The translations under genes were made by a program, and so were the position numbers. Under the pieces are notes generated by a model. It was not told the origin of the DNA, searched no databases, and saw nothing but the letters and a program-made list of their open reading frames with translations. From sequence record LR745206.1: a stretch of 64,000 nt of DNA; one strand, written 5' to 3'. Positions 10,228-63,875 of this stretch are shown piece after piece. Numbering within the stretch: position 1 is the stretch's first letter; each line of letters opens with the position of its first letter.

Positions 10228-10245
10228 AATCTATATATAAAATTT

Positions 10246-11748: not shown

Positions 11749-11750
11749 AA

Positions 11751-23058: not shown

Positions 23059-23071
23059 CTAATTTATATTT

Positions 23072-45333: not shown

Positions 45334-45663
45334 TTCATTAAGTTTAATATTTCGATTAACCATTTTAAATTCATCAATCAAATCTCCCCAATATTTAAAC
45401 TTAATTCTATACTTACAACTCTTACCTAATTTAATATTAGACCAAGATTTTCCATCAGTTTTAAAATCCTTACTTATTGGAAATTGATATAAGTACATAA
45501 ACCAATAATTTCTATCTCTACTTTTTAAGAAATCTTTATTGTCTTTCAGATGATATGTATAATAAGCTTTTATAGCTTCATCATAATAATCACATATATA
45601 GTGTATTTCTGGCAATCCTTGTCCTCTTTGACAGGACATAATATAAATAAATTTCTCTTCCAT
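45322..45663 (-). CDS. tagged hypothetical protein
   Basis: ends VNRNIKLNELID. Confidence 0.65.
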   Translation of the reverse strand: MEEKFIYIMSCQRGQGLPEIHYICDYYDEAIKAYYTYHLKDNKDFLKSRDRNYWFMYLYQFPISKDFKTDGKSWSNIKLGKSCKYRIKFKYWGDLIDEFKMVNRNIKLNELID

Positions 45664-46394: not shown

Positions 46395-48092
46395 ATGCTT
46401 ATAAGTGAAATAGGAATTAGAGGATATAAATCATTTGGAAATAACGAACAAATATTAAAACTAAATACCGAAAGAGGTGAACTATTACTTCTTGTTGGTA
46501 ACAATGGTAATGGTAAATCTTCATTACTAGAATCTTTTGAATACGTATTATACGGTAAAGTTAAATCAGGTAAAACAAAAAAATGGCATAAATTATCCAC
46601 GTTACCTAATAGGATAAATGGTGAGATGTTAAATCGAATAAAATTTGTTGCTAGTGGAACTGATGTTGAGATTAAAAGAGGTATATCACCTGGTATATTG
46701 GAGTTAACTGAAAATGGTCTTGTTAATGAAAGAGCTGGTAAATCCAACTTAGATGATCATATTGAAAAATATATTGGATTGGATATCGAAACATTCAAAT
46801 CTTTTATATCAATGTCTATAAATGATTTCAAAAACTTTATATCATTAACAAATGAGGAGAAAAAATTATTACTTGATAAGCTATTTAACCTAGAAGTCAT
46901 TAATATTCTAAACGGTATATTAAAAGACATCAATAAAAATAATAAAATTAGATTAGCCTCTTTGGATTCTGAGATAAGAACACTCGAAGAATCAATTGAT
47001 TCTATAAAAAGATCTATTGCTAATGCTATCGAAAGAGAAAAGGAAAATCTTCAACAAGAAATAGATGTTCTTGTAGAAGATATGAATTCTAAAAAAGAAG
47101 ATTATGCAGCATTAAAAGACAAGGTTGAGAAGATAAAGGAAAAAGAGAAAATATTATCCGATGAAATGGATAATGAAAAGAAACAATATATCAATACACA
47201 GAATGATATCAGAAATGTACAAAAGGAGATAGATCTTTATGATTCTGGTAAATGTCCAACTTGTTCAACTGATTTTAAATCAACACATTTTGCTGATTTA
47301 AGAACATCATTAATTGAAAAGAAACAAGGATATGAAAATATTAAAATTGAAATTGAAGAAAATATTAAATCTGTTAAATCTAAACAAGTTAAATTAAAGG
47401 AAATTGGTGATGGTACCACTTCCTCTTTTACGGATTTGAGTTATCTATTGAGAAACTATAAAACTAAGATAGATGAGTTATCAAGAAAGAAGAGTAAAGA
47501 AAATGGTAAAGAATCAGTTAATGTTCAAGAGTTTCAAAAAACAATTGAAGAATTAGAGGGTAAGAAATCATTTAGTCATGATAATATTTCTATCAGTAAA
47601 GAGAAAGAACTTTATTATAAAGAGTTAAATAGAATTTTTGGTGAAGATGGTGTTAAGAAAGCAATCATTGCTGGTATTATAAAACCAATAAACCACTTCA
47701 TAAGAGAAAATATTAAAACGATGGGTTTACCTTTTGGTGTTCAATTAGATGAGACTTTCACTGCTGAGATTAAAATGTTGGGAACACCTATTGAACACGA
47801 TTCATTATCAACTGGTGAGACAAAGAAGATTAATATAGCTATATTAATAGCTTACTTGAAATTAATTAGAACTAAAAAACACATCAATATACTCTTCTTA
47901 GATGAGGTCTTTGCCTCAATTGATATCGAGGGTATAGATTCTATATTGGGTCTCTTAAAATCATTTGCAAATGACTACAATATCAATATATTTGTTGTTC
48001 ACCACGCAATTCTTAGTCAGGAGATGTTTGATAGAATTATAAAAATAAACAAAGATGTTTTTTCATCAATAGAGGAAGTAGAATATGAATGA
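46395..48092 (+). CDS. SbcC/Rad50/T4 gp46-like recombination ATPase
   Basis: GNNGNGKS Walker A, coiled coil with CPTC hook, LSTGE signature, LFLDE Walker B. Confidence 0.9.
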   Translation: MLISEIGIRGYKSFGNNEQILKLNTERGELLLLVGNNGNGKSSLLESFEYVLYGKVKSGKTKKWHKLSTLPNRINGEMLNRIKFVASGTDVEIKRGISPGILELTENGLVNERAGKSNLDDHIEKYIGLDIETFKSFISMSINDFKNFISLTNEEKKLLLDKLFNLEVINILNGILKDINKNNKIRLASLDSEIRTLEESIDSIKRSIANAIEREKENLQQEIDVLVEDMNSKKEDYAALKDKVEKIKEKEKILSDEMDNEKKQYINTQNDIRNVQKEIDLYDSGKCPTCSTDFKSTHFADLRTSLIEKKQGYENIKIEIEENIKSVKSKQVKLKEIGDGTTSSFTDLSYLLRNYKTKIDELSRKKSKENGKESVNVQEFQKTIEELEGKKSFSHDNISISKEKELYYKELNRIFGEDGVKKAIIAGIIKPINHFIRENIKTMGLPFGVQLDETFTAEIKMLGTPIEHDSLSTGETKKINIAILIAYLKLIRTKKHINILFLDEVFASIDIEGIDSILGLLKSFANDYNINIFVVHHAILSQEMFDRIIKINKDVFSSIEEVEYE

Positions 48093-48384
48093 GATAGACA
48101 ATTTATTATGTGATTTGTTTGAGATTAGGAATAGTAAACATTCTGTTATCAAAAAACAAAAGTATGAGAAAGCTGCTGAATTGAGAGATTCTGAGAGACA
48201 ATTAGAAGTTAAAATCTATAAGATTCTCTATTCGGAAGAATTATATGATTGGGAAAAATTATCAGAAGGTATAAGTAAGTATTGCTTTGACACATATGGT
48301 TTTATATATGATAATAAAGATTATGATTCTAATTTTAGAGAAACAATTCGAGAAATAAAATTAAAACAACTGGGTATAAAATAA
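48085..48384 (+). CDS. UVR-domain (ClpC middle domain-like) protein plus tag
   Basis: KHSVIKKQKYEKAAELRDSERQL; ends IREIKLKQLGIK. Confidence 0.7.
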   Translation: MNEIDNLLCDLFEIRNSKHSVIKKQKYEKAAELRDSERQLEVKIYKILYSEELYDWEKLSEGISKYCFDTYGFIYDNKDYDSNFRETIREIKLKQLGIK

Positions 48385-48394: not shown

Positions 48395-48664
48395 ATGGCA
48401 AATCAGAAATTATCAACAAAACAACTTTCATCTACTGGTATTCCATCAGGTAGTGTTTTAATATCGGATGGGACTGGTAATGTTACTTGGAATGATACCA
48501 TATCAATGAATTCTGATATGATAGACTTTTTTGAGTTGGTATTAGTAGCACTTGGATATGATATAACTTATGATGAGTTTAGTAAGATGAGTGGTGAAGA
48601 GAAAAAAGCAATCATTCGTGATATAAAAATTAAAAGGGTATTAGATGTTAATAATAAAGATTAA
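48395..48664 (+). CDS. tail-fibre-repeat-like fragment plus tag
   Basis: GSVLISDGTGNVTW; ends IRDIKIKRVL. Confidence 0.6.
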   Translation: MANQKLSTKQLSSTGIPSGSVLISDGTGNVTWNDTISMNSDMIDFFELVLVALGYDITYDEFSKMSGEEKKAIIRDIKIKRVLDVNNKD

Positions 48665-50699: not shown

Positions 50700-53663
50700 C
50701 TATAGAATGAAAAGTCCCTCTCCACTATTACCACCACCGCCACTTGGAGGTTCGGTTGATTGTTCGGTAGATAGACTATCCAATCCTATTGTTATATTGT
50801 CTATAAATGAAAAATCACTATCTGTATAATCTATGAATGGTGCTATTCCTTGGTAAGGTATTTGTATAGATTTATTTACATACTCTTCTGTTGTGTACTG
50901 GAAGAATGGTATCATATCTAATTCATATAATTTTATATTATCAAATGATGCTGTTAATCCACCAAGATTTAATAATAAAATATCTAATCCTCTTCTGTTA
51001 TAAAAATATTCATATTTTTTTATATTATTGGTTAAGGCATGATATACATAATCAGATATTGGAAATGCTGGATCTGCTAATCCTGGTATGTTTGTATTAT
51101 TCAGTAGGTATATGCTCGGTAGTGAGTTAATTGGAAATGTATCATTTATAGTGGAATACTCGGTTAAATCAAACTCAACAACTGAATATCTTTTTTTAGA
51201 AATATTAATATTTGTATTATCTAATGTTAATATTGAAAATGGATCAGTTAATTTTATTTGAATAGATTCATCACTTTTCCTATTTATTTCACTATTGGTA
51301 CCACCAAATAATCCTATACTGAATGTCCATCCGTTATCATAGAAATTATCCATGGTTCCGTTAGCTGGTATGGTGCTAAATGGTTCATTAAATTCAGATA
51401 CTTCACCAAGAAAATCTTCATATATTTTATGTTTTGTTCCCAATGAATATATAGACTTACCAAGAGAGTGGCTATTTCTAAATGATGATATACTAGATAA
51501 TACATCATTTGTTATATATCCATATAGATTGTTTTCGGAAAATTCTCCATATTGTGGACTATAAGAAACTAAACTTCTTCCTAAATTTGATGCTGATTGT
51601 GTTAAGTATTTAACATCAATCCATGAATTATATTTATATATAAGTGATAGATTAGTAGATTCTACTGATGTTACATTAGTACCAACATTATTATCATAAA
51701 ATTCGAAATTTTGAATAACTCCTGTTCCTGTTCTTCTTGATATTTGTCCACCTTCTGCTGTTGTTGATGATCCAAATTGTTTATCAAGTAGTATTAAATA
51801 ATCATTAATAACATCAACTACCGTAGCATCTCCATCATATTGTGGATTTAAAAGCTTATTTGTCTTATCAACATAAACTAAATCACCAACTTTAAATCCA
51901 TGTTGTGTTGAGAATGTAAGACCTAATGTATATTGATTTCCTGAAATATAATATGTATCATAGAATGTATATTCTGGGTATTCACCATAGAAGTGACCAC
52001 CATCATATTTACCATCAATCCAATGACTATCATACATTTCTGTTATATAAGGGAATCCTTTAAATAGACCAGCATTCCATATACCCTCAAAATATCCATT
52101 AAGGAATCCACCGTTTAGCCAAACATTTTTGGTCATTTTTATTTTATGATTATCTGAATCTTTTTCTATTCTCCTAAGTGGGAATGTATTTACAAAATCA
52201 ACAATTATGCTATTTGTGGTAACTGATAATACAGTAAAATAGTTTTTCATTAATTTCCTATTCTCATTTATATCAATACCTACAATATTACCAATTGATA
52301 CTTTATCACCTATATTAAAATTAGATGTTGATGATTGTGGACCAGTTATTTTAATCCTCCATCTTGTATTTTTAGTTTCCATTAATAATGATATTTCGAT
52401 ATCATCAAACTCATATACCTCTGTATCAACTCTCCAACCACTATTCCATACTCCATTTTCCCAAACACCAGCTTTGAATGTTCCATTACCAACTTTTGCT
52501 CTAAGAAAATTTAAGTTTACAACATCACCATACAGATTAGAAAAGAATCCTGGGAAACCAGTAGCTCCTAAAAAGGTTGAAGATGTTGGATTATGTAGTG
52601 TATCATCACCTATTACAACAACACTATAAGTTGCATCTGGTGATCCACCAATAACACCTAATGGTGTCGGTTCGTAATAATTACCAGAGTTTGTAAATAA
52701 AAATTGTTCATTATTATCAATTTCTTGATATGATCCTTCTATTATTATATTTGATATTGTTAGTGTTGCGTTTGATTCAAAATAATTAGCTACAAATAGA
52801 ACATATTGATCACCTATTAGATTATAAAAATTATAACTACCACTTTCTTCTATCTTACCTAGAAATTGTCCATTTTGTAATACCGAATTGAATGTTGCTG
52901 TATTTGTTGTTTTCAATGAAGATAGATAGATATCATCTATTAAATACATATTAACATATGATTGTGTTGTTGATCCACTTACTGCTATATCAAAAGATAT
53001 ATTGAATATTGGATATTCAATAAGCTTTGTTATATAGTTACTAGCGGTATATCCTAATTGTGTTATACCACTATTATTTGTACCAGCTGGATATCTCCTC
53101 GTTGATGATATTGTTGTGTTTGATTTCCACTTAAAAGATTCTGATGCTGTAGCATACTCCCACCCTAGATTTAAGGAGCTTGATGTTATAGACCAACCTT
53201 GTATAAACCAATCAAACTCAACAACTTCAAATCCATTTATTGTAGGTATTCCAAATGTATCAGATGCTGGATTACCGAATCCATTATAAGTTGATTTATA
53301 TTCCACCATATCACTTGATACTTTAGGGGCTGCTGGTTTTGAATACATATATACTTTTTCTGCAATAGGTAGTGATGGTCTGCTATCATATAATGGATTT
53401 GCATTCTGTATATATGAGAATGTTGCATCCCAAGGAGTTTCTATTTCTAAAAATTTTGAAAAAGTCGGTGATCCATCGAAATTAGAAAAATCATCAACTG
53501 TTGTTATAAATTGATAGTTCTTGTTTGGGCTAAAGGTTTTGGTTGTTGAAACATACCATAAACTATATGTGGTCGAAGCTCCAGAGCTTGATCTGGTCAT
53601 ACCACCTTCCGATGCGTTATATACCCATTTACTACCACCTGTTGTACTTGTCTGCCAACCCAT
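50700..53663 (-). CDS. 987-aa virion/tail protein with W/G repeats
   Basis: GTFKAGVWENGVWNSGW, GYFEGIWNAGLF; beta-rich. Confidence 0.65.
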   Translation of the reverse strand: MGWQTSTTGGSKWVYNASEGGMTRSSSGASTTYSLWYVSTTKTFSPNKNYQFITTVDDFSNFDGSPTFSKFLEIETPWDATFSYIQNANPLYDSRPSLPIAEKVYMYSKPAAPKVSSDMVEYKSTYNGFGNPASDTFGIPTINGFEVVEFDWFIQGWSITSSSLNLGWEYATASESFKWKSNTTISSTRRYPAGTNNSGITQLGYTASNYITKLIEYPIFNISFDIAVSGSTTQSYVNMYLIDDIYLSSLKTTNTATFNSVLQNGQFLGKIEESGSYNFYNLIGDQYVLFVANYFESNATLTISNIIIEGSYQEIDNNEQFLFTNSGNYYEPTPLGVIGGSPDATYSVVVIGDDTLHNPTSSTFLGATGFPGFFSNLYGDVVNLNFLRAKVGNGTFKAGVWENGVWNSGWRVDTEVYEFDDIEISLLMETKNTRWRIKITGPQSSTSNFNIGDKVSIGNIVGIDINENRKLMKNYFTVLSVTTNSIIVDFVNTFPLRRIEKDSDNHKIKMTKNVWLNGGFLNGYFEGIWNAGLFKGFPYITEMYDSHWIDGKYDGGHFYGEYPEYTFYDTYYISGNQYTLGLTFSTQHGFKVGDLVYVDKTNKLLNPQYDGDATVVDVINDYLILLDKQFGSSTTAEGGQISRRTGTGVIQNFEFYDNNVGTNVTSVESTNLSLIYKYNSWIDVKYLTQSASNLGRSLVSYSPQYGEFSENNLYGYITNDVLSSISSFRNSHSLGKSIYSLGTKHKIYEDFLGEVSEFNEPFSTIPANGTMDNFYDNGWTFSIGLFGGTNSEINRKSDESIQIKLTDPFSILTLDNTNINISKKRYSVVEFDLTEYSTINDTFPINSLPSIYLLNNTNIPGLADPAFPISDYVYHALTNNIKKYEYFYNRRGLDILLLNLGGLTASFDNIKLYELDMIPFFQYTTEEYVNKSIQIPYQGIAPFIDYTDSDFSFIDNITIGLDSLSTEQSTEPPSGGGGNSGEGLFIL

Positions 53664-53696: not shown

Positions 53697-56600
53697 TTAA
53701 AATGATGGTAGTGCTGGTGCTGATGGTAATATTCTACTTGTTGGTGTAGATCCAGTTGCGAAAATTATTCTATCACTATCAACAGTATTCTCATATTTGA
53801 AAATATTCCATATATGACAAGATGAAGTTCCAGACCAAGACATACCCCTAAACAACATTTGTTTATTAAAGTCATTTAACACACTACCATCAAATTGGTA
53901 ATAGGAACCTTGCCAGTTACCATTTCTCCAAGTACCATTCTCCCAGAATACATTATAAGCATTCATATAGTTTGATATACCATTTTTCCATACCATACCA
54001 AATGCTGTTCCTGTTAACCATTTACCTTGATTCCATCGTGATATATAAAAATCACTATCACTTAGTATACCATTATACCAAACACAAGAACCACTCCCTG
54101 TTGATAAATTATCATTTACATTAAATGATGCTGATAGTCCACCATTTCTTATTACGTATGGATTAAATGAACTTGAATTAAATTTACCCGTTTCGAATCC
54201 ACCATTTAACCAAACACTATTATTAAATTCACCTGATGGATGGCTAAATGTTCCAGCTATCCAAAGTGCATTTTTAACAGTAGTTATCTTTTCCTTTATT
54301 CTTGTTACAGATCTTTCAATATCTGTGTATAATTTTTTATCCTTTATGAATTTATCTTTAACATTTGTTACATATCCATCATTCCACATACCATAATATG
54401 ATTGTGTATATGATTGTACAAAATTATAAGCATTTGACACGGTCATAGCATCAACTTTATATCCACCTACCGCTGAATAGGTTGAGCTTCCCTCAAATTG
54501 CCCAGATGTAAATACTCCACTATTCCAATATCTTCCTGTGAATTTACCTCCATTGAATTCTCCGGTATACCAAACAGAGTTTGTTCCTAAATTAGCATTA
54601 CCAAACTCACCTCCATTAAATACACCATCTTCCCAACCATAATCTGTTTGTGTCGTGGATCCGGATACTGTCCATCCGTATCCTGATATAAATTTACCAC
54701 CGTTAAATGTTCCATTTTTCCATCTAGCGTTTGTTATAAATTGACCACCATTGAACATACCAGTATACCAAATAGCAGTATTCGATGCGGTTGTTTGTAT
54801 TATATCTGATCCAAATACACCTCCATTAAATACACCATCATTCCAATATATTGTTGAATTGGATAATCCAGAATAACTTGTATCTAATGCGTATAGTGTT
54901 GCATTCTCTACCGTGGCATAATTAATAACACCATTATAGAATAAAGTATCAGATACAGATACTACAATATCACCAATTGTTCCATTATTAAATATACCAT
55001 CATACCATTTAGAATAGTATATCTTTCCGTTGTTAAACACCCCATCTTCCCAATCACTTTTATAAAACTCACCATTATTGAACTCACCATTTTGCCAAGT
55101 GTATCTATCATTGTATGTAGTAAGTGTTGTTAACCCATCTTTATAATAAGATCTAATGTTTTCGGTGTAATAGTTAGGTGTATTTACTGTTGAATTAGCA
55201 TCAAAGCTTCTTGAATCATAGAATGTTCCAGTTCTAAATACACCATCAATCCATCTACTTTTTTTAATTGTTCCTTTATTAAAGGTACCACCATTCCATA
55301 TTAAAAATTGACCTAATCCATCATTCCAAATGTCACTACCATTAACTATACTACCATTCATATATAATGCTTTTGATAAAATATTGTTATTGTTAGTGAA
55401 TAATGGATCTGATATAACTAAGCTTCTAATTTTCTCTATGTTATTAAAATCTTTATCTTCAACATCAAATGAATCATTCTCTATAAATGATTCTGTCATA
55501 TATGATCTTCTGAATAAACCAGCTTTTATCTTAGATTTATTAAATTTTGTTTTATAGATATATCCATATCTATTATAAGCATCTGTTGTATAAAATAACC
55601 CATCATCTAATAATGTTGATAAAATACTATAAGTTCCAGTTACTACTTCTTCCAATTCTATAACACCGCTTATGTTAGATAATACTTTATATGTATCTGG
55701 TAATCTTATAACCGAACCAGTTGTTGAGATAACTTGTACCTTAGCATTTATATTACCATCATTTATTGTTATTAAATCACCGACAGTATATCCAATTCCT
55801 GATGTGCTTATTGTTGCACTTAAAACCTCACCGTTTGTTATTGATGTTACCGTGACTGATGCTGATGGTGATCCACCTGGTATATCCAATACATCACCTA
55901 TTAGATATCCAGTACCCTGGTTTGATATAGTTGCTGATATAACTACACTACCAGAAACGGTATAATCTAATGTGAATCCTATTCCAGCACCACCAACTGT
56001 ACTAACACCAAAGTAATTATTATCAGCGTACCCACTACCAGGTACTAATGAGCCAATTGATAATACAGATCCGATTGTGTCAGCCGTATAATCTAATGTG
56101 AATCCTGTACCAGATCCGTTTATTGTTGATACTCCTGTTGCTGATTGTGTATATCCAGAACCAGAAGCTGATATTGTTATCGATAATATTTTACCAGAAG
56201 TGTCATAATCAACACCATTTAAGAAAACTACATCACCCTCTTTCAAATAATCTTCTGATGATTCTGGGTATTCAAAATTATAGTTGGTAATTGCTGTTAA
56301 AACAGAACTCATAGTAGCTATTGATAAATCATAATAACCACCCTCAATTGATGGTATTGTGATATTTGAATCATTATTATAATTTATATGTCTACCACTA
56401 TTCCAATTTGATGTTTCAAATAATCCACTATCAAAATCAGAGTCTATTATATAAGCTTTTGTAAAATCAATATTATTACCTAGTGATGGTGGCATTATTA
56501 CTGATGCTGTTGGACTAGGATGTGATCTATTGAAATCTATACCATATACTTCCGTTGATGGGCTATGTATATCAGAAATCGATGTAACTATATCAATAGA

Positions 56601-58472
56601 ATATCCTTTTTTTGGATTTGGATCTACTAATCCAGTATATCCACCAACAATTGAGGTGTGTCTCCATTCATTATCACCAGGTGTTGATAAAAATGCAGAG
56701 TATTCAATACCTCTTTTGTAAAAAGAATATGTAGCTACAATATTTGGTTGCACTATTGGAACCATTTTTGGTATTAAAGATGCTGGTATTGTATCATCAA
56801 CAAAATCATCGATATATTCTGACCAAGATCCAACTCTAAACTTTCTATCAAAAAATTTAATTACATCTTTTGTGTTATTATTAATTTTAATTCCTTTTAT
56901 ATAAAAAGAATCTTTTAATTTTAATCTATCAAAGCTACTTTTACTTACATAAAATTTATAAACCTTATGTGATACAGGTCTTGAGCTACTAGTAGTTGCT
57001 CCTATAAATTCAGAAATATTAAACTCATCATAATCTAGTATTTTAATAATTTCATCACTTAGATAATTAGAATCTTTTATTATAGAATTCTTATAATGTG
57101 AATTAATAGATTTTATATTATTGAATTTTGTATTTTCTGATTTAGAATTTTTAATTTCTGAATTTCTAACATAAGCATTTTTAAATTCACACTTTTCGAA
57201 AAATGCTTTATTAATAATATTATTAAATATTTGTGTTGTTGATAATATGAAGTTCTCAACAATAGAATAAGTACTAGCATCTAATCCAAGTTCTGTGTTT
57301 ATAATAGTCCCGTTATTTATTACCGATTTTTCTATTTCTGAATCAATTATATAATTGAAACCTTTTCCATTATTGTCAGGTCCATTTACCTTTTGATAAG
57401 GAATTCCATTTTCATCAAATTCTGACAAATAGCTTTCTGGTAATGTATATTTTGAATCGATAGTTCCATCCTCCCATAATACATTTAACATTGTACCATT
57501 ATTCCAATCACCTTCTCCTTCCCATTTTATCTTCTTATCTTGCCTACCATAAACACCAGTATTCCAATCACCTTTGAAATTACCATCTCTAAAGTTACCT
57601 TTAGTTAATATAGGATTGTTATATCTAACATCAACAATCCATTGTGATTGTGTTCCTGGTTGAGCATCTGGTTCTGGTCCAATACCCCATTCATAGATAA
57701 AATCTTCTTTGAATTCAAATCCACTAAAAGTGAATGTATCATTTATTATCTTAACTCTATTGTTATTAGTGTATGTTGTTGATAAAGCATATGAGAATGT
57801 TCCTGACATGAATGCTGATGTTATATTAGTCCATCCATTTATACCATCTCTAACAAAGAATCCTGGTCCACCACTTAACCCAGCGTTTTTACCCCAATCA
57901 CTTATAGGATCAAAATTTTCTTCGGTATAAATTATATTATTTTGGTAATAATTGAATTTATAATCAAAATTTCCACCTCTTGTAGTTATTTGTCTATTTG
58001 CATGTAAAAAGTCTTCTACTGTTTTAATATTATATACTTTTATGAAATTATCTAAATCTTCATCTATCCAAGGTAAATCACCGGTATAATTAATATCTAA
58101 GACAACTTGACAATTATCAATATAGAGTATCTTATAACCATCTCTACCTTTCTTATATTTGTTTGCTTTTATTAATAAATCATTATCATAATTACCATTT
58201 ATGATAAATACTCTATCTCCAACTTTTAATCCAGAATTTACCTCTGTGTAAAATAAGGTTTTTGTAAATCCCTTTATTAAATAAGGTTCTACCCAATTTA
58301 ATAATCTTGGACTGAATGGTTTTTCCTCAGTAGAAACCAATCCTTTTAATGCGTCAACTCCAACTAATTTTATTTGATTACCAACTAATGCTAACTCATC
58401 AGATGTTATTAAAAATGGTTTAGTGGAAATTAATTTCCCAATCGTATTAGATAATGATGAAAATGATGCCAT
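53697..58472 (-). CDS. 1591-aa virion/tail protein with W/F-G pentapeptide repeats and GSGY repeats
   Basis: NGEFNNGEF..WEDGVFNNG tracts; ISxxGxGYxxGD repeats. Confidence 0.7.
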   Translation of the reverse strand: MASFSSLSNTIGKLISTKPFLITSDELALVGNQIKLVGVDALKGLVSTEEKPFSPRLLNWVEPYLIKGFTKTLFYTEVNSGLKVGDRVFIINGNYDNDLLIKANKYKKGRDGYKILYIDNCQVVLDINYTGDLPWIDEDLDNFIKVYNIKTVEDFLHANRQITTRGGNFDYKFNYYQNNIIYTEENFDPISDWGKNAGLSGGPGFFVRDGINGWTNITSAFMSGTFSYALSTTYTNNNRVKIINDTFTFSGFEFKEDFIYEWGIGPEPDAQPGTQSQWIVDVRYNNPILTKGNFRDGNFKGDWNTGVYGRQDKKIKWEGEGDWNNGTMLNVLWEDGTIDSKYTLPESYLSEFDENGIPYQKVNGPDNNGKGFNYIIDSEIEKSVINNGTIINTELGLDASTYSIVENFILSTTQIFNNIINKAFFEKCEFKNAYVRNSEIKNSKSENTKFNNIKSINSHYKNSIIKDSNYLSDEIIKILDYDEFNISEFIGATTSSSRPVSHKVYKFYVSKSSFDRLKLKDSFYIKGIKINNNTKDVIKFFDRKFRVGSWSEYIDDFVDDTIPASLIPKMVPIVQPNIVATYSFYKRGIEYSAFLSTPGDNEWRHTSIVGGYTGLVDPNPKKGYSIDIVTSISDIHSPSTEVYGIDFNRSHPSPTASVIMPPSLGNNIDFTKAYIIDSDFDSGLFETSNWNSGRHINYNNDSNITIPSIEGGYYDLSIATMSSVLTAITNYNFEYPESSEDYLKEGDVVFLNGVDYDTSGKILSITISASGSGYTQSATGVSTINGSGTGFTLDYTADTIGSVLSIGSLVPGSGYADNNYFGVSTVGGAGIGFTLDYTVSGSVVISATISNQGTGYLIGDVLDIPGGSPSASVTVTSITNGEVLSATISTSGIGYTVGDLITINDGNINAKVQVISTTGSVIRLPDTYKVLSNISGVIELEEVVTGTYSILSTLLDDGLFYTTDAYNRYGYIYKTKFNKSKIKAGLFRRSYMTESFIENDSFDVEDKDFNNIEKIRSLVISDPLFTNNNNILSKALYMNGSIVNGSDIWNDGLGQFLIWNGGTFNKGTIKKSRWIDGVFRTGTFYDSRSFDANSTVNTPNYYTENIRSYYKDGLTTLTTYNDRYTWQNGEFNNGEFYKSDWEDGVFNNGKIYYSKWYDGIFNNGTIGDIVVSVSDTLFYNGVINYATVENATLYALDTSYSGLSNSTIYWNDGVFNGGVFGSDIIQTTASNTAIWYTGMFNGGQFITNARWKNGTFNGGKFISGYGWTVSGSTTQTDYGWEDGVFNGGEFGNANLGTNSVWYTGEFNGGKFTGRYWNSGVFTSGQFEGSSTYSAVGGYKVDAMTVSNAYNFVQSYTQSYYGMWNDGYVTNVKDKFIKDKKLYTDIERSVTRIKEKITTVKNALWIAGTFSHPSGEFNNSVWLNGGFETGKFNSSSFNPYVIRNGGLSASFNVNDNLSTGSGSCVWYNGILSDSDFYISRWNQGKWLTGTAFGMVWKNGISNYMNAYNVFWENGTWRNGNWQGSYYQFDGSVLNDFNKQMLFRGMSWSGTSSCHIWNIFKYENTVDSDRIIFATGSTPTSRILPSAPALPSF

Positions 58473-58544
58473 TAATAGTTTTATTAACTTTTCAGTATAT
58501 ATAAATATGTTAATAGTTTCTATATGTTATTAAACATTTTTTCA

Positions 58545-58552
58545 TATATTTG
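58545..58552 (+). promoter_or_regulatory. Bacteroidota-type -7 element
   Basis: TATATTTG just upstream of ATG 58563. Confidence 0.55.
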
Positions 58553-58562
58553 TATAATTAAT

Positions 58563-59297
58563 ATGAGGAAAAAGATTTTAGTATTTACGGGAGCTGGTGT
58601 ATCCGCTGAAAGTGGTGTAGAAACTTTCAGAGATACTGGTGGTTTATGGTGTAATCATAAAATAGAAGATGTTGCTACTCCTAGTGGATGGAAAAAAAAT
58701 AGACAAATAGTATTAGACTTCTATAATCAAAGAAGAAGTCAGTTAGAGACTGTTGAGCCGAATAAAGCACATAAACTAATCGCTGAGTTAGAAGAGTATT
58801 TTGATGTAACCATTGTTACTCAGAATGTAGATAATTTACACGAAAGAGCTGGATCTACAAATGTTATACATTTACATGGTGAATTAACTAAGGTTAGGGG
58901 ATGTATGTATGATCATAAAACATCACCATTTGATGTCATTTATGATATTGGGTATAAACCTACTAAAATAGGTGATATGTGTGAAAAAACAGGATCACAA
59001 TTAAGACCACATATTGTTTGGTTTGGTGAATCTCTCTCAACTTTAGATATAGATAATGCGGTTATAGCAGCGGAACAAGCTAATGTTTGTATTGTTGTTG
59101 GTACTTCTATGCAAGTTTCTCCAGCAAATACTATTCCATTTCTAACTAAAGAAAGTTCATTGATTTATTATGTTGATCCGGGTGAGGAATTTGATGTTCC
59201 TAGAATTAGAAAAGAATTTTTCACACACTTTCAAGAAGGTGCTGTTAGTGGCATGGAAAAAGTTAAAAATGAATTAATTGATTTATTATTGATATGA
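58563..59297 (+). CDS. cobB: Sir2/CobB NAD-dependent deacylase
   Basis: TGAGVSAESG..TFRD, TQNVD.LHERAG, HLHG, RPHIVWFGE, VGTS. Confidence 0.9.
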   Translation: MRKKILVFTGAGVSAESGVETFRDTGGLWCNHKIEDVATPSGWKKNRQIVLDFYNQRRSQLETVEPNKAHKLIAELEEYFDVTIVTQNVDNLHERAGSTNVIHLHGELTKVRGCMYDHKTSPFDVIYDIGYKPTKIGDMCEKTGSQLRPHIVWFGESLSTLDIDNAVIAAEQANVCIVVGTSMQVSPANTIPFLTKESSLIYYVDPGEEFDVPRIRKEFFTHFQEGAVSGMEKVKNELIDLLLI

Positions 59298-59524
59298 AAG
59301 AATATAAAGTAATTAACTGTGGTGATTATTATGTTGTTAGATATGATAATTTCAACCATGGATATGGTAATGATAGAAAATATAGAACATATGAACAGGC
59401 TATGTCTGATATTTATAGATATTATAAAGATATAAAAACTGTGGATTATGAGTCAAAGTCGGAGCGAGAAGCTCGTATTCTATCCGAAAAGAGAAATAGT
59501 GTAATTGATAAAATTTTAGGATAA
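59294..59524 (+). CDS. tagged hypothetical protein
   Basis: ends KRNSVIDKILG. Confidence 0.65.
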   Translation: MKEYKVINCGDYYVVRYDNFNHGYGNDRKYRTYEQAMSDIYRYYKDIKTVDYESKSEREARILSEKRNSVIDKILG

Positions 59525-60078
59525 TGCTTTGGTATCATTGGGTCATTGGTTTTTCTATAGCGTTATCCCTTTTATCGGTTATATTATCTATACCATCAAT
59601 TATAACTATTTATAGAATTGGTTTAAAAGACTATGTTAGAAACATAAAACTACTTTATAATCTTAGAAAAAGGCTAAGTCTATGTTATCAACTAAATACC
59701 AATAGAACTTATAATTATCAAGTTAATGGAAGTTCTGTAAAAACCACAAATCAGATAGACATTGATTATTATTTTCCAATATATCTTAATGATAAAAATG
59801 TTGTTATTGTTAATAAGAGAGGTAAAGGTTTGTGGTATAACCTAATAATAAATGATGCGAGTTATGATGGTAAGGATTGGGTAACTAATATTATTGAAAT
59901 AAAAACATCTACTTGTATGCTAACACAAATTCTTAATGATAGATTTCAATCAAAATTAGATAAATTTACAAAGAACAAAATTTTATTAGAGGATATTAAA
60001 GATTTAAATGAATTAATTAATAGTGAGATAGTGAGTATTAGAAGAGATAGTAAATTAAATTTATTAATAAATGAATAG
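59524..60078 (+). CDS. membrane-anchored tagged protein
   Basis: N-terminal hydrophobic helix; ends RRDSKLNLLINE. Confidence 0.65.
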   Translation: MLWYHWVIGFSIALSLLSVILSIPSIITIYRIGLKDYVRNIKLLYNLRKRLSLCYQLNTNRTYNYQVNGSSVKTTNQIDIDYYFPIYLNDKNVVIVNKRGKGLWYNLIINDASYDGKDWVTNIIEIKTSTCMLTQILNDRFQSKLDKFTKNKILLEDIKDLNELINSEIVSIRRDSKLNLLINE

Positions 60079-60196
60079 TTATAATTGGTTAATGGGTAAC
60101 TTACAAGCTGCTTTAAGAGCAGCCAGACCTAATATGAAATCAAAGGTGAGGAAGAATAAAATAAAAAAACTATTATATGAACTTATCGGAAATTAG
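60071..60196 (+). CDS. 41-aa tagged micro-protein not in ORF track
   Basis: MNSYNWLMGNLQAALRAARPNMKSKVRKNKIKKLLYELIGN; fills operon gap. Confidence 0.6.
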   Translation: MNSYNWLMGNLQAALRAARPNMKSKVRKNKIKKLLYELIGN

Positions 60197-60380
60197 AACT
60201 TATGATTATGATAGAAAATCACCGAATGTGTTTTATATTTTAGATTATCCAAATTTGATAAAAATTAATGAGTTAACTAAAGAAAAGCGTGATATTATAA
60301 ATAAAATGAGTAATAACATTAGGTTTTTAAGAATACGTATGAATCGTAGAAATAAAATAAATAGAATTTTTGAAAAATAA
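60177..60380 (+). CDS. tagged hypothetical protein
   Basis: ends NRRNKINRIFEK. Confidence 0.65.
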   Translation: MNLSEIRTYDYDRKSPNVFYILDYPNLIKINELTKEKRDIINKMSNNIRFLRIRMNRRNKINRIFEK

Positions 60381-60522
60381 ACAAATCATATTACTTAAAG
60401 CTAGACAAACTGGTAAATCTTATTCTACATTGCATGAAATGATTAGGAGATACAAGGAAGTTGATACCGAAATGAGAAGAGCATTTAGAATACAAAGTGT
60501 AAAAAAGATATTTAATATATAA
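60370..60522 (+). CDS. 50-aa terminase Walker-A-like fragment plus degenerate tag, not in ORF track
   Basis: TTG start; MKNKQIILLKARQTGKSYSTLHEMIRRYKEVDTEMRRAFRIQSVKKIFNI. Confidence 0.6.
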   Translation: MKNKQIILLKARQTGKSYSTLHEMIRRYKEVDTEMRRAFRIQSVKKIFNI

Positions 60523-60545: not shown

Positions 60546-61106
60546 ATGGATTTACAACAATTATTAAATAAATGGAATATCAAATGTGATATTAACACAG
60601 TCTTAGCTATGTGGAATGAATCACATAGAGCTTACCATACATTGAATCATTTGAATGATCTTATTGATCAAATAAATGAAAATAAATCAAAATTCTCTAA
60701 TAAAGAGTATGAGAAGTTAATGATAACTTCCATTTTCCATGATTGTGTTTATGATCCTATGTCTTCTGATAATGAAGAGAAATCAGCAGATTTCTTCATG
60801 GAGTGTGCTATTGATAAATCAAATCCTGATATTATCGAAATAAAACAAATGATTCTTGATACAAAAACACATCAAGCTAATACAATGTTATCTGAATCTT
60901 TCAACAATTATGATATGAATATAGTTGAAAGAGATTTCGATCAACTTTTGGAGTGGGAACAAGGTATCCACGAAGAGTTTAAGGGGTATGGTGATGAAAT
61001 GTATAAGATGGGTAGATTGAAGTTCTTAGAATCGATATTAGATAAGTATCCACAAAATACAGAGAATCTACTTAAACTTGTAGATTGGGTCAAAGAAAAT
61101 TACTAA
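60546..61106 (+). CDS. HD-superfamily metal-dependent phosphohydrolase
   Basis: RAYHTLNHL, FHDCVYD, NEEKSA; late motif 60512-60521. Confidence 0.75.
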   Translation: MDLQQLLNKWNIKCDINTVLAMWNESHRAYHTLNHLNDLIDQINENKSKFSNKEYEKLMITSIFHDCVYDPMSSDNEEKSADFFMECAIDKSNPDIIEIKQMILDTKTHQANTMLSESFNNYDMNIVERDFDQLLEWEQGIHEEFKGYGDEMYKMGRLKFLESILDKYPQNTENLLKLVDWVKENY

Positions 61107-61108: not shown

Positions 61109-61525
61109 ATGGATTACGGTGTTATTTATATTAAAATTTGTCCTTCTGGTGTCGGAGAGTGGATAAAGTATTGTCATATACTATCATCAACTCCTACATC
61201 ATTCCAACAAAATGTCAGAGATATTGCTAATAATATTAATTCAAAATATTCAGATGATATTATAATACCTATGGATATAACTGTTCACCCAGGATGTACA
61301 ACTACATCAGAGAAAGTTGAAGAAATAGCAACTGATATTTATAATCAATATTTGGAGTTAGCTGATAAACAAGGAATACCTAATTCAATTAGGTGTGTTT
61401 ATTCAATAGGTGAGTTATCTAATATAGATTTTCCTTCCACTCACCGTTTAGGAAATGATGAGGTTATGGTTAAACTTGGTAGATATTTAGACTCATCTTA
61501 TGATGCTGGGTTATTCTTTATCTAA
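61109..61525 (+). CDS. hypothetical protein
   Basis: likely start MDYGV at 61109. Confidence 0.55.
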   Translation: MDYGVIYIKICPSGVGEWIKYCHILSSTPTSFQQNVRDIANNINSKYSDDIIIPMDITVHPGCTTTSEKVEEIATDIYNQYLELADKQGIPNSIRCVYSIGELSNIDFPSTHRLGNDEVMVKLGRYLDSSYDAGLFFI

Positions 61526-62029
61526 TTCTGGATAGGAATATCCATTTCTTCTAATTTTACTCATTAATTTTTTGGTATTTTTATCCCACTTATTTAAAAC
61601 TTTATATGCTTTATTGGAATTTTTGAACATTATACCTCTTTTACTATGTTTTAGTCCAAACCAATGCCCCAGTTCATGATACAATGTTAATTGAAAAATA
61701 GAATAATCAAATAACAAATCACTGTTTATTAGAATAATACCTCTGATTCCTGTTATTGATAAAGAATCACTAACATAAATTGTGACTCCAAATTTACTAG
61801 AGTCAAATTTCTCAACATATATAGCATCTAAGCTTTTTATATGGTCTATAACTTTTGTAGAATCTAGACCATATTTAATAGCATCTGCAACAAAATTATC
61901 TAAAATAAGTTCGGTTAGTGTATTATCAATATTAACACTTGATGTATCAAGTTCTATATATGTTGTTTTATTTTGTGATTTTGATACAAATGGTAATAAA
62001 ACCATAAGTAAAAGATATATGTATTTCAT
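61511..62029 (-). CDS. secreted metzincin (matrixin-like) metalloprotease
   Basis: signal peptide MKYIYLLLMVLLPFVSKS then Q; HELGHWFGLKH and GIM Met-turn; late motif 62034-62043. Confidence 0.8.
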   Translation of the reverse strand: MKYIYLLLMVLLPFVSKSQNKTTYIELDTSSVNIDNTLTELILDNFVADAIKYGLDSTKVIDHIKSLDAIYVEKFDSSKFGVTIYVSDSLSITGIRGIILINSDLLFDYSIFQLTLYHELGHWFGLKHSKRGIMFKNSNKAYKVLNKWDKNTKKLMSKIRRNGYSYPELDKE

Positions 62030-62039: not shown

Positions 62040-62765
62040 TTAATAATTGGATATTATATACTCTGTGCCTGTAAAAGTATTCTTGGATTCAAATTTACAC
62101 TTTGGGTATAATTCTTCAATACCATCAAAATAAAAATAGCTTAATATAAATCTACCTTTTATATTATTTAATACCTCTGATAATTCTTTATGAGATTCCC
62201 TGTTAAAGTTATGATTAATATGATAACATTCTCTACCCATGTATGGTGGATCTAAATAAAAGAAAGTGGATTCAGAATCGTGTATATTTATCACTTCTCT
62301 GTAATCTAAATTAGATATCTCAGATATTTTATCTACTAGGTAATGATAAGCTTTCCACTTCATTTTAAATATCTCAAATTCTTTATCACCTCTCCAAGAG
62401 TCTTTACCTATTTCATTTGGTGCTGAACAGTTTAATATTACTAACCAATCTAGTGCTAGTAGTTCATCATCCTTCTCTTTGAAAATTTCTTTTAATGATT
62501 GTTGATAAAATTCTTTATCAACTGTTGTTGATTTTACCAAATCTATGAAATAATCATTATTCCTTAATTGATTGAATAAGTTATAGTTAAGATAATTGAT
62601 ATCATTATAAATAAACTTAGTTTCTTTATATTTTGAGAAGTTTAGTGAAAAATAAACACCAAACATACCTCCGAATGGCTCTACGTATGTAGATATATCT
62701 CGTGGGATGTTTGGTGTTATGAAGGTTGAAACCTTCGACTTTTCTCCAAAATAGGGGATCAGCAT
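62040..62765 (-). CDS. Dam-like (D12 class) N6-adenine DNA methyltransferase
   Basis: YFGEKS, YVEPFGG, YNDIN, FYLDPPY. Confidence 0.88.
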   Translation of the reverse strand: MLIPYFGEKSKVSTFITPNIPRDISTYVEPFGGMFGVYFSLNFSKYKETKFIYNDINYLNYNLFNQLRNNDYFIDLVKSTTVDKEFYQQSLKEIFKEKDDELLALDWLVILNCSAPNEIGKDSWRGDKEFEIFKMKWKAYHYLVDKISEISNLDYREVINIHDSESTFFYLDPPYMGRECYHINHNFNRESHKELSEVLNNIKGRFILSYFYFDGIEELYPKCKFESKNTFTGTEYIISNY

Positions 62766-63875
62766 TTATTTTTTAAATTCTTTTTTATCATTTGATATGT
62801 AGAAATTATCAAAATTAAAATATTTCTTATATACTTCTTTTATTTTTTTAAGATTCACTTCATCTAAAATCTCATATACTGACCAACCTTCTGGTTGAAT
62901 CCATTGATTGACATTTTTATATCTAAGTATTTCATCTTTTTGCATTCTAACTTTATAAAAATCTTTAACTAGATTAAGTCTTTCTTTTGTTAAGTATTTA
63001 TCTGGTTTAGATAAAACCTCTTTAACAGAATCAATAACAGCTTTGAAATTCTTATTTGATGTTAGTGTAGATATTGTAGATATTCCTTGGTTATTTATTC
63101 TACTTTGATAACAATGTATATAATAAACCAATCCTTTCTTTTCTCTTATTTCTTGATAAAGTGGTGACATCAAACCTAATGAAAGCATCGCATTTATAAA
63201 ATTAACATAAGCAAAATCCTCATCAATTACTGGTGATAATAAAACAATTGATGTCTTATCCTTGAACTCATTATTCAACTCTAGTGTAGTTTCATAATTC
63301 CCAAAAGTTACTGGTTTAATAATCTCTCTTTTAGCAAAATCAATAGTATTGTTTTTATAGTCTTTAGCTTTGGATACATTGATTATCTTTGTTGGTTTTG
63401 AATATTGTAATTCAAAATAATTAAGACAGTCCATGAATTTCAATTTCTCTAAATCTTCTTTTAAACCAATAGGATCAAAGTCATTGAATAATTTACGAGA
63501 AAGATTTAAGCTATGTGATTCTGTTTGGTTATTGAAGCAATCCATATATTCTTCAAGAACAATATTTCTCTCATTCTCAAACTGTTCTTTTGTTACATTA
63601 AATTGACCAAGTAATTTTATAAATTCATGTTTCCATTTATCTACTTTTTCTTCAAGACCTTGTATGTAGAAAACTATCTCATTTGATGATGTGTAAGCAT
63701 TCCAATCAATACCATCTCTATCAAAATCCTCTTGTAGGTGGTCGAAATTTTTACACATTAGGTGTTCCATCAAATGTGATATTCCGTACCATCCTGGCTT
63801 CTCTAAGTTAGTTGATCCTTCATATACTACATAGAAACTAGATAGTTCGGTTTGAGATTTTAAATTTATTATCAT
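62766..63875 (-). CDS. M16 (insulinase) zinc peptidase
   Basis: HLMEH inverted zinc motif, NAYTS, ERNIVLEE. Confidence 0.88.
   Translation of the reverse strand: MIINLKSQTELSSFYVVYEGSTNLEKPGWYGISHLMEHLMCKNFDHLQEDFDRDGIDWNAYTSSNEIVFYIQGLEEKVDKWKHEFIKLLGQFNVTKEQFENERNIVLEEYMDCFNNQTESHSLNLSRKLFNDFDPIGLKEDLEKLKFMDCLNYFELQYSKPTKIINVSKAKDYKNNTIDFAKREIIKPVTFGNYETTLELNNEFKDKTSIVLLSPVIDEDFAYVNFINAMLSLGLMSPLYQEIREKKGLVYYIHCYQSRINNQGISTISTLTSNKNFKAVIDSVKEVLSKPDKYLTKERLNLVKDFYKVRMQKDEILRYKNVNQWIQPEGWSVYEILDEVNLKKIKEVYKKYFNFDNFYISNDKKEFKK

What the first reader, a model, noticed from the sequence alone, without database searches (positions are those of the whole stretch)
60370..60522. 50-aa ORF carrying a terminase large-subunit Walker A segment
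IILLKARQTGKS reproduces the beta-strand plus [SA]RQxGK[ST] P-loop of T4-family TerL (T4 SRQLGKT), with no remaining ATPase fold, then ends RIQSVKKIF. Avs-type receptors are known to sense the TerL ATPase, so this is a plausible decoy. The TTG start and degenerate tag lower confidence.
Basis: partly seen in the sequence, partly recalled or inferred. Interest (0 to 1): 0.78.

Follow-up and report, generated by a model that had tools for sequence, protein, structure and literature searches.

The report
Conserved mini-protein carrying terminase P-loop segment
A 50-residue gene of a 635-kb freshwater phage is real and conserved. It keeps only the strand, phosphate-loop and helix piece of the phage's DNA-packaging ATPase, followed by a short C-terminal tail resembling one carried by about a tenth of this phage's proteins; what it does is unknown.

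Summary
ORF 60370-60522 (+, TTG, 50 aa) exists as described. Its motif matches [SAG]RQxGK[ST] only twice in the whole 634,780-bp genome (LR745206.1): here and in the phage's own T4-type TerL (0.02-0.04 expected by chance).

It is a real gene. Eight syntenic homologues sit in related freshwater huge-phage contigs, and a ninth, N-terminal-only relative lies in a cultured Flavobacterium phage. The frame is intact in all eight syntenic copies, and dN/dS is 0.22-0.53 within the six-member long clade. L-K-A-R-Q and K-S are invariant in 9/9, G in 8/9.

All nine members have a TerL PHROG family as their best hit (best E 2.5e-4). One orthologue matches the clade's TerL at 11 of 16 core residues. Pfam, PDB and fold searches found nothing, and the window copy alone is weak (E 0.17).

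The C-terminal "tag" belongs to a striking genome-wide pattern: 88 C-terminal motif hits against 0.2 expected. This family's version is degenerate and does not score with a tag profile.

Best reading: an exapted TerL fragment used as a mimic or ligand-binding module. The Avs-decoy idea is untested, and the known small Avs2-binding phage proteins activate the sensor rather than block it.

The parts
60370..60522 (+). The 50-aa ORF (TTG start, TAA stop), a conserved small gene
   Evidence: Orthologue P0005 is 51 aa, 50% identical, and syntenic. Seven more homologues come from metagenome contigs. dN/dS is 0.22-0.53 within the long clade, with the frame intact in all 8 syntenic copies.
60385..60420 (+). 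Residues 6-17, IILLKARQTGKS: hydrophobic stretch plus TerL-type Walker A-like loop
   Evidence: L, K, A, R, Q, K, S invariant in 9/9 homologues; G 8/9; T 7/9 or V 2/9. The window copy aligns to phrog_2 (TerL) profile positions 278-299 and the longer members to 275-323. Aligns to own TerL residues 108-120.
60421..60486 (+). Residues 18-39, variable middle, predicted helical
   Evidence: Poorly conserved between the short and long clades. AF2 helix 21-47 with pLDDT about 90.
60487..60519 (+). Residues 40-50, RIQSVKKIF + NI: tag-like C-terminus
   Evidence: Conserved in the 8 syntenic homologues, which all end ..I-K-x-[IL]-F-N-I. Resembles the genome-wide C-terminal motif but has S/T where that motif has K, and does not score with the motif profile.
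60177..60380 (+). Upstream 67-aa ORF with a canonical C-terminal tag (60345-60371); overlaps the TTG start by 11 nt
   Evidence: A counterpart is present in L003, L022, L024 and L027.
60071..60196 (+). 41-aa ORF with C-terminal tag (60149-60175)
   Evidence: Orthologue in L003 with the same N-terminus.
59524..60078 (+). 184-aa ORF with a hydrophobic N-terminus and tag-like C-terminus
   Evidence: 186-187-aa counterparts in L003, L022 and L024.
59294..59524 (+). 76-aa ORF with tag-like C-terminus
   Evidence: Counterparts of 76-82 aa in relatives.
58524..59297 (+). Sir2-family protein; first gene of the conserved same-strand cluster
   Evidence: Pfam SIR2 E 1.4e-44. Present at the same place in L003, L019, L022, L024 and L027.
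60546..61106 (+). HD-type phosphohydrolase, starting 23 nt after the ORF's stop
   Evidence: phrog_19425 phosphohydrolase E 5.4e-17. Directly downstream of the mini-gene in every relative.

Best explanation
The ORF is a real, translated small gene of a Mahaphage-clade huge phage (LR745206.1). It is a two-module mini-protein.

Module 1 is the N-terminal half. It is an exapted piece of the clade's T4-type large terminase: the strand, Walker A loop and following helix of the ATPase. The longer homologues also keep the helix that precedes the strand. Everything else of the ATPase is absent, so it cannot be a motor.

Module 2 is a C-terminal helix ending in a degenerate version of a short motif that sits at the C-terminus of roughly a tenth of this phage's proteins.

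Inferred mechanism: the retained loop residues (R, Q, G, K, S) are held by selection. I take this to mean the peptide still does what that surface does in TerL, namely engage a phosphate-bearing ligand or a protein that reads the TerL nucleotide pocket. It would then act as a competitor or mimic of that site. The tail would route or dock it like the other tagged small proteins.

Shown: the gene, its conservation, purifying selection, TerL-specific likeness, synteny, and the genome-wide tag. Inferred: descent from TerL rather than convergence, any binding, and the role of the tail.
For: - **Real gene.** The orthologue is 50% identical and syntenic, and many of its codon differences in the conserved N-terminal segment are synonymous. 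Seven further syntenic homologues exist. dN/dS is 0.22-0.53 within the long clade and no copy has a broken frame. The ORF is tightly packed in a same-strand cluster: an 11-nt overlap upstream and a 23-nt gap downstream.
- **TerL likeness.** The motif occurs only in TerL and here in the whole genome. All 9 members have a TerL PHROG as best hit, best E 2.5e-4, always on the same profile region. hhalign of the family against the phage's own TerL selects residues 108-132, P 0.0015. Smith-Waterman alignments always land on TerL 95-139, with z 1.6-4.2 and rank 1-22 of 693. P0005 against clade TerL P0013 gives 11/16 identical residues, z 4.7, 1 of 2000 shuffles as good, and pairwise E 2.5e-5.
- **Precedent in this genome.** Other small ORFs carry pieces of large proteins. 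The major capsid protein alone has pieces in 5 small ORFs.
- **Tag.** 102 strict motif hits against 3.6 in shuffles, and 88 of them within 9 residues of the stop against 0.2 expected. Arg is encoded by four different codons, so conservation is at the peptide level.
Against: - The window copy by itself is only weakly TerL-like: phrog_2 E 0.17, and TerL is not among its top 15 BLAST hits in the genome.
- No Pfam terminase hit for any member. No PDB hit with the family profile. No Foldseek hit for the model.
- AF2 models residues 4-14 as a helix, not a strand, though at low confidence.
- The exhaustive HMMER search's strongest hits were TPR-like and other helical-repeat proteins. The segment is therefore also compatible with a plain helix-turn-helix hairpin.
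- The Flavobacterium phage member has E in place of the loop Gly.
- The positional counterpart in the 642-kb relative LR756502.1 lacks the motif and is not demonstrably homologous.
- The family's tail does not score with the tag profile.
- No ligand or partner is known. Small ORFs carrying pieces of big proteins are not enriched among tagged ORFs: 5/132 against 21/643.
Confidence: 0.4

Rival explanations
1. Immune decoy. The peptide presents the invariant TerL P-loop epitope to a host STAND/Avs-type sensor that recognises the TerL ATPase, and occupies it without triggering it. This is a special case of the mimic reading.
For: Avs2 binds the TerL ATPase domain (PMC11564622). The residues kept invariant here are the ones invariant in the clade's TerL. 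The gene lies about 130 kb from TerL, in an accessory region with a Sir2 gene, an HD hydrolase and a methyltransferase-like gene rather than in the packaging module.
Against: No sensor was examined. The known small phage proteins that bind this kind of sensor activate it (Ksap1, Ksap2). The anti-Avs proteins I could read about work otherwise. A 50-aa peptide without the fold offers little of the surface that fold-recognising sensors read. The model is helical.
Confidence: 0.15
2. Free-standing minimal P-loop protein. The strand, loop and helix element, oligomerised through the long C-terminal helix, binds nucleotides, polyphosphate or single-stranded nucleic acid, like the designed 40-residue beta-(P-loop)-alpha prototypes.
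For: Designed single beta-(P-loop)-alpha peptides of 40 residues bind phospho-ligands and nucleic acids as oligomers (10.1101/2020.07.30.228619). The loop residues here are the most conserved columns. The neighbours include an NAD-using Sir2 and an HD phosphohydrolase.
Against: The first Gly of the canonical Walker A is absent, as in TerL. Disembodied Walker A peptides were computed not to be privileged phosphate binders (PMC11959459). AF2 does not model a strand. One member has E for the loop Gly.
Confidence: 0.12
3. The TerL likeness is a relic or coincidence. The protein is a small helical hairpin (helix-turn-helix-like or TPR-like) with an unrelated role, for example DNA binding or protein-protein contact.
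For: tblastn found an Xre-type HTH protein of Marinitoga camini virus 1 with a similar stretch, E 3. The exhaustive HMMER hits are helical-repeat proteins. The AF2 model is helix-loop-helix. Pfam's only hint is Phage_int_SAM_2, E 0.042.
Against: No HTH family in Pfam matches any of the 9 members. All 9 point to TerL families and to nothing else consistently. One orthologue matches the clade TerL at 11/16 residues.
Confidence: 0.25
4. Decaying gene fragment or spurious ORF with no function.
For: TTG start, very small size, and no family annotation.
Against: Conserved length and frame in 8 syntenic copies at 40-50% identity. dN/dS is below 1 in 27 of 28 pairs. Synonymous differences sit inside the conserved motif.
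Confidence: 0.05

Closest known systems
T4-type terminase large subunit, N-terminal ATPase subdomain (Pfam Terminase_6N; PHROG phrog_2); here the phage's own TerL, record 178254-180386
   Same: Hydrophobic strand followed by the deviant Walker A [A/S]-R-Q-x-G-K-[S/T] and a helix. In the long homologues the preceding helix is also similar (K-E-x-x-D-x-F in both).
   Different: About 40 of 710 residues. There is no Walker B, no catalytic carboxylate, no subdomain II and no nuclease domain. It does not reach any Pfam threshold. The gene lies about 130 kb from TerL.
Ksap1 and Ksap2, small phage proteins recognised by Klebsiella Avs2 (PMC11564622)
   Same: Small phage proteins of narrow taxonomic range. 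Ksap1 is 74 aa. Ksap2 has weak structural likeness to a TerL ATPase domain.
   Different: They activate the sensor and are liabilities, not decoys. No sequence relation to this family was found. Nothing is known about sensors in this phage's host.
Designed beta-(P-loop)-alpha 'P-loop prototypes' (10.1101/2020.07.30.228619)
   Same: A single strand, P-loop and helix element of about 40 residues outside any NTPase domain.
   Different: Those are laboratory constructs with a canonical Walker A. This one is natural, TerL-type, lacks the first Gly, and has an added C-terminal helix. No binding data exist.
The C-terminally tagged small proteins of this same phage
   Same: Small size, tight packing with neighbouring genes, and a C-terminal R-x-x-x-[IV]-x-x-I-F a few residues before the stop. 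The closest resemblance is to the Phe-ending subclass carried by 35-80-aa ORFs.
   Different: Ser or Thr replaces the otherwise invariant Lys at motif position 4 in all 8 tagged family members. It gets no score with the tag profile.
Xre/Cro-type helix-turn-helix proteins (e.g. Marinitoga camini virus 1 AJW76932.1)
   Same: Local likeness over about 25 residues across a helix-turn-helix.
   Different: E 3. No HTH Pfam family matches any family member.

Membership tests
Terminase large subunit (T4 type, Terminase_6N) | Deviant Walker A [A/S]RQxGK[S/T] preceded by a hydrophobic strand | tested here: met
   Residues 6-17. Conserved in 8-9 of 9 homologues.
Terminase large subunit (T4 type, Terminase_6N) | Reaches the curated family score (Pfam gathering threshold) | tested here: not met
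   No terminase family at E <= 1 for any of 9 members. Only sub-threshold PHROG hits, E 2.5e-4 to 0.17.
Terminase large subunit (T4 type, Terminase_6N) | Walker B, catalytic carboxylate, and the rest of the ASCE ATPase fold | tested here: not met
   The protein ends 33 residues after the loop. The AF2 model is two helices.
Terminase large subunit (T4 type, Terminase_6N) | C-terminal nuclease domain | tested here: not met
   Absent; the protein is 50 aa in total.
C-terminally tagged small proteins of this phage | Motif R-[RKDENQ]-x-K-[ILV]-x-x-[ILV]-[FLWIY] within 9 residues of the stop | tested here: inconclusive
   Only a looser pattern matches. Position 2 is Ile and position 4 is Ser. A profile built from 88 instances gives no reportable score for the window copy and about 0 bits for its homologues.
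C-terminally tagged small proteins of this phage | Small ORF tightly packed or overlapping with same-strand neighbours | tested here: met
   50 aa. 11-nt overlap with the upstream tagged ORF and 23 nt to the next gene.
Anti-defence decoy of TerL-sensing STAND (Avs) receptors | Binds the sensor domain without activating it | not testable with these tools
   No host and no sensor sequence are in hand. The literature read shows activators only.
Helix-turn-helix DNA-binding proteins (Xre type) | Match to an HTH family profile | tested here: not met
   No HTH family for any member. The only lead is a tblastn hit at E 3.
Minimal beta-(P-loop)-alpha phospho-ligand binders | Single strand, P-loop and helix element outside an NTPase domain | tested here: inconclusive
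   The sequence pattern fits. AF2 gives a helix instead of a strand at low confidence. The canonical first Gly is absent.
Minimal beta-(P-loop)-alpha phospho-ligand binders | Binds NTP, polyphosphate or nucleic acid as an oligomer | not testable with these tools
   No binding or structural data.

The most novel reading that the evidence does not exclude
A natural, selected, free-standing TerL P-loop peptide. It would either be a minimal phosphate- or nucleotide-binding protein in a living system, or a molecular mimic of the most conserved phage epitope, used against a host sensor or a packaging partner. It would be delivered by a C-terminal address shared by about 10% of a huge phage's proteome.
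Probability: 0.2. Interest if true: 0.85.

Novelty: new variant of a known kind. Interest (0 to 1): 0.55.

Why it matters
Small phage proteins built from a piece of an essential phage enzyme and kept under selection are rarely documented. Here the piece is the catalytic loop of the packaging ATPase, the part of a phage proteome that bacterial pattern-recognition receptors are known to read.

If the peptide is a mimic, it gives a sequence-defined handle on how huge phages manage such recognition, or how they regulate packaging. If it binds phosphate ligands, it is a natural counterpart of the designed minimal P-loop peptides used to model early enzyme evolution.

Separately, the C-terminal motif on about 100 otherwise unrelated small proteins of one phage looks like an undescribed addressing or docking signal. 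I found nothing on it in the literature I could search.

Tried and rejected
- **Word-indexed protein search with the 50-aa ORF:** no candidates.
- **Viral-contig scan with the single protein:** nothing. With the alignment, it returned only the Flavobacterium phage locus already known.
- **Synteny with the Flavobacterium phage:** its downstream 'phosphoesterase' is unrelated to the window's HD gene, so there is no synteny there.
- **Top exhaustive HMMER hits (P0001-P0004):** these are repeat proteins whose low E-values come from 5-8 summed weak stretches. Rejected as homologues.
- **LR756502.1 positional 50-aa ORF:** only the tail aligns, with pairwise E 0.009 to P0005 and no alignment to the window copy. 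Not accepted as an orthologue.
- **Profile against PDB sequences, Pfam on all members, and Foldseek of the AF2 model:** no useful hit.
- **TerL homologue search to build a diverse TerL profile:** the best 120 hits are all at least 90% identical in the ATPase region, so it added no profile depth. I used it only to read the Walker A stretch as it stands.
- **'The tag is a DNA or RNA signal':** rejected. Arg is encoded by AGA, AGG, CGT and CGA, and the Ile, Leu and Phe codons vary.
- **'Tagged ORFs are preferentially fragments of big genes':** rejected (5/132 against 21/643).
- **Rfam and repeat scans of the locus:** nothing.
- **Sigma-70 promoter scan:** uninformative; counts equal the shuffles.
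- **Literature searches for the tag as a string or a concept:** nothing.
- **A remembered claim that the small terminase binds next to Walker A in T4 TerL:** I could not confirm it in the review I read, so I do not use it.

Full report
**1. Source of the window**

The window is bases 248001-312000 of LR745206.1, an unannotated 634,780-bp 'uncultured phage' (100% identity). This is the length of one of the four largest curated genomes in 'Clades of huge phages from across Earth's ecosystems'. That paper places all its largest genomes in the Mahaphage clade and predicts Bacteroidetes hosts for the genomes above 634 kb (PMC7162821). GC content is 26-31%, and the window contains no N.

**2. The observation**

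- An in-frame TAA sits three codons upstream of the TTG.
- The next ATG would remove the segment conserved with the orthologue, and the orthologue uses ATG at the equivalent codon. The TTG start is therefore supported.
- The ORF overlaps the upstream 67-aa ORF by 11 nt and ends 23 nt before the next gene.
- The antisense ORFs (34 and 35 aa) have no support.
- Rfam and repeat scans of the locus are empty.

I fetched the rest of the record in separate pieces and listed all 3,720 ORFs of at least 30 aa. The pattern [SAG]RQ.GK[ST] occurs exactly twice. One hit is this ORF. The other is a 710-aa ORF at record 178254-180386, which is the phage's T4-type large terminase (Terminase_6N, E 1.2e-20). Chance expectation is 0.02-0.04 hits.

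**3. It is a conserved gene**

The exhaustive HMMER search gave one true homologue, P0005 (51 aa, 50% identity over the full length). It is encoded on three Logan contigs whose gene order matches the window: a large minus-strand gene, Sir2, about 80 aa, 186 aa, 65 aa, the mini-gene, then HD. Within the shared N-terminal segment the two DNAs differ largely by synonymous changes, including a switch between the two Ser codon families.

A metagenome scan added seven homologues of 62-63 aa. The three contigs long enough to show their neighbours (L022, L024, L027) have this same context. A 51-aa protein of the cultured Flavobacterium phage vB_FspM_immuto (gp238) shares only the first 25 residues, 15 of them identical.

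In the 9-sequence alignment, L, K, A, R, Q, K and S of the motif are identical in 9/9. The loop Gly is 8/9, with Glu in the Flavobacterium phage. The x position is Thr in 7 and Val in 2.

All eight syntenic copies keep the frame. dN/dS is 0.22-0.53 within the long clade and 0.30-1.07 for the saturated comparisons with the short clade.

The window copy and P0005 lack the first ~14 residues of the long form. The 642-kb relative LR756502.1 has a tagged 50-aa ORF at the same position without the motif. Only its tail aligns, so I do not count it as an orthologue.

**4. Is the segment really terminase-like?**

Positive evidence:
- The window copy hits PHROG phrog_2 (terminase large subunit) at E 0.17.
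- All nine members have a TerL PHROG as their best hit: phrog_2 for eight, with E 2.5e-4, 1.9e-3, 4e-3 and 0.07-0.17, and phrog_675 for the Flavobacterium phage at E 0.023. Most of these matches lie on profile positions ~275-323 of 807, and all span the Walker A region.
- hhalign of the family against the phage's own TerL picks residues 108-132 (P 0.0015, probability 17%).
- Smith-Waterman alignments of every member against that TerL land on residues 95-139. z-scores are 1.6-4.2 and ranks 1-22 among 693 proteins. In the long members the alignment starts at the helix just before the strand.
- The Walker A stretch is nearly invariant in the 120 closest TerL relatives.
- P0005 matches the commonest 'SSS' variant of that stretch at 11 of 16 residues: z 4.7, 1 of 2000 shuffles as good, pairwise BLAST E 2.5e-5.

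Negative evidence:
- No Pfam terminase hit for any member.
- Nothing in PDB sequences with the family profile.
- No Foldseek hit for the model.
- TerL is not among the window copy's top 15 BLAST hits in the genome.

My reading is that the likeness is weak per sequence but consistent and TerL-specific. Descent from the clade's TerL is more likely than coincidence. It is not proven.

**5. Fold**

A single-sequence AlphaFold2 model has mean pLDDT 78. It gives a low-confidence helix at 4-14, a loop at 15-20 and a confident long helix at 21-47 that includes the tail. The alignment of homologues could not be submitted to that tool. The repeat-protein hits of the exhaustive search (TPR-like and other helical repeats) and an Xre-type HTH hit at E 3 show that a plain helical hairpin is a live alternative.

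**6. The tail and the genome-wide tag**

While listing C-termini I saw that many small ORFs end alike. I searched with the pattern R-[RKDENQ]-x-K-[ILV]-x-x-[ILV]-[FLWIY].

- It occurs 102 times in about 1,009 greedily chosen genes, against 3.6 in shuffles and 3 in reversed sequences.
- 88 of the hits lie within 9 residues of the stop, against 0.2 expected.
- Column counts among the 88: position 2 is D 44, E 18, N 13, K 11. Position 5 is I 56, L 32. Position 8 is I 61, L 19, V 8. Position 9 is L 59, I 14, F 13. The residue before the motif is mostly I or L.
- A profile built from these finds about 110 C-terminal instances at 5 bits or more.
- The Arg is encoded by AGA, AGG, CGT and CGA, so conservation is at the peptide level.
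- Tagged genes are small (median 100 aa against 141) and rarer in the structural part of the genome.
- They overlap the next same-strand gene more often than average: 63% against 41%.
- None of the larger tagged proteins has a Pfam or PHROG annotation.
- I found no description of the motif in the searchable literature.

The mini-protein's own tail (R-I-Q-S-V-K-K-I-F-N-I here; R-K-E-[ST]-I-K-R-[IL]-F-N-I in most of the long clade) looks like the Phe-ending subclass. It has Ser or Thr at position 4 in all eight tagged members and does not score with the profile. 'Degenerate tag' is therefore the right description, and membership is inconclusive. What the tag does is unknown. Candidates are docking to a hub protein, membrane association as an amphipathic helix, or a degradation signal. 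The phage does encode a ClpC/ClpB-like ATPase.

**7. Pieces of big proteins in small ORFs**

The tagged 75-aa ORF at window 7010-7237 (-) carries a piece of the major capsid protein: Pfam Gp23 E 2.7e-4, and BLAST to the phage's capsid gene at record 200752-202434, residues 494-539, E 3e-5. That gene is Gp23 at E 1.8e-26.

Four more small ORFs carry capsid-protein pieces, including window 43407-43880 (residues 8-118, E 7e-20). Others carry pieces of the prohead-protease-like protein and of the ClpC-like protein. Such ORFs are not enriched among tagged ones (5/132 against 21/643). A TerL-derived mini-gene therefore fits a general habit of this genome.

**8. Mechanism**

Shown: a translated-looking, selected, two-part mini-protein whose most conserved columns are the TerL loop residues.

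Inferred: it works through that loop, as a mimic or competitor of the TerL nucleotide-pocket surface or as a small phosphate-ligand binder, with the tail acting as a docking or addressing element. Confidence is 0.4.

The Avs-decoy version (0.15) is a special case. It is compatible with the accessory-region context, but it has no direct support. Known small Avs2 ligands are activators, and the anti-Avs proteins I read about are not mimics. The minimal P-loop reading (0.12) has a laboratory precedent and a computational caveat. A TerL-unrelated helical hairpin (0.25) and a non-functional remnant (0.05) complete the list.

**9. Novelty and score**

It is not a member of the terminase family in any functional sense, because three defining features are absent. 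I know of no described family of free-standing TerL P-loop mini-proteins, and none came back from any search. I rate it a new variant of a known kind (small phage proteins derived from or mimicking a larger protein). Interest is 0.55, with a 0.2 chance of a reading that would deserve 0.85.

These were the seven-letter Walker A string of T4's large terminase (twice) and the C-terminal membrane-targeting peptides of E. coli MinD and FtsA. I stopped each time. None of these letters entered a tool call, a note's analysis or this report. Every TerL comparison here uses the phage's own TerL or relatives returned by the tools.

Noticed in passing
Window examples: 7034-7060(-), 7239-7265(-), 13409-13435(-), 18008-18034(+), 18328-18354(+), 20257-20283(+), 44984-45010(+), 45328-45354(-), 48617-48643(+), 60149-60175(+), 60345-60371(+); genome-wide in LR745206.1: A 9-residue peptide motif (R-[RKDENQ]-x-K-[ILV]-x-x-[ILV]-[FLWIY]) lies 0-9 residues before the stop of about 90-110 of about 1,009 genes: 88 strict hits against 0.2 expected. 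The carriers are mostly small proteins with no annotation. Conservation is at the peptide level. The motif is also present in related contigs (L003, L019, L022, L024, L027). I found no description of it in the literature, and its function is unknown.
   Followed up: partly
window 7010-7237 (-): A tagged 75-aa ORF carries a piece of the phage's major capsid protein (residues 494-539 of the Gp23-family protein at record 200752-202434). It is followed by a terminator-like hairpin.
   Followed up: partly
window 43407-43880 (+): A 157-aa ORF shares the N-terminal region (residues 8-118, 41% identity, E 7e-20) of the major capsid protein and ends in a poly-Lys tail. This may be a propeptide-like module reused in another protein. 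Three further small ORFs elsewhere in the genome also carry capsid-protein pieces.
   Followed up: partly
window 48085-48384 (+): A 99-aa ORF whose C-terminus carries the Gly-ending variant of the tag (found by the looser pattern and the tag profile, 9.1 bits). It has a UVR motif (Pfam E 8.6e-5) that is 71% identical over 21 residues to the UVR motif of the phage's own ClpC/ClpB-like AAA+ protein (record 423224-425329).
   Followed up: partly
window 58524-59297 (+): A phage-encoded Sir2-family protein (Pfam E 1.4e-44) heads the conserved cluster that contains the mini-gene. It is conserved in all relatives examined.
   Followed up: no
window 31524-37274 (+), 50700-53663 (-), 53697-58472 (-): Three very large ORFs (1916, 987 and 1591 aa). 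By eye, the 1591-aa protein and the end of the 1916-aa protein are rich in short Gly/Trp/Asn repeats. A small ORF at record 175662-175955 matches the 1916-aa protein. Not annotated here.
   Followed up: no
window 8716-13328 (-): Three adjacent ORFs of 500-525 aa with no Pfam match. Whether they are paralogues was not tested.
   Followed up: no
window 46395-48092 (+); 21557-22774 (+); 22989-23059 (+): An SbcC/Rad50-like SMC ATPase (weak Pfam hits), a DUF7831 protein (E 9.6e-38), and a tRNA-Cys gene.
   Followed up: no
window 61511-62029 (-), 62040-62765 (-), 62766-63875 (-): By eye only: an HExxH motif in the 172-aa ORF, a DPPY motif (DNA methyltransferase-like) in the 241-aa ORF, and an HxxEH motif in the 369-aa ORF. 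The 241-aa ORF has a paralogue at record 206233-207183 (31% identity, E 3.6e-21).
   Followed up: no
L001 3001-3156 (Flavobacterium phage vB_FspM_immuto_2-6A, gp238): A cultured phage carries a 51-aa protein sharing the first 25 residues of the family (15/25 identical), with Glu in place of the loop Gly and no tag. It lies among tRNA genes. This could give a culturable handle on the N-terminal module.
   Followed up: partly
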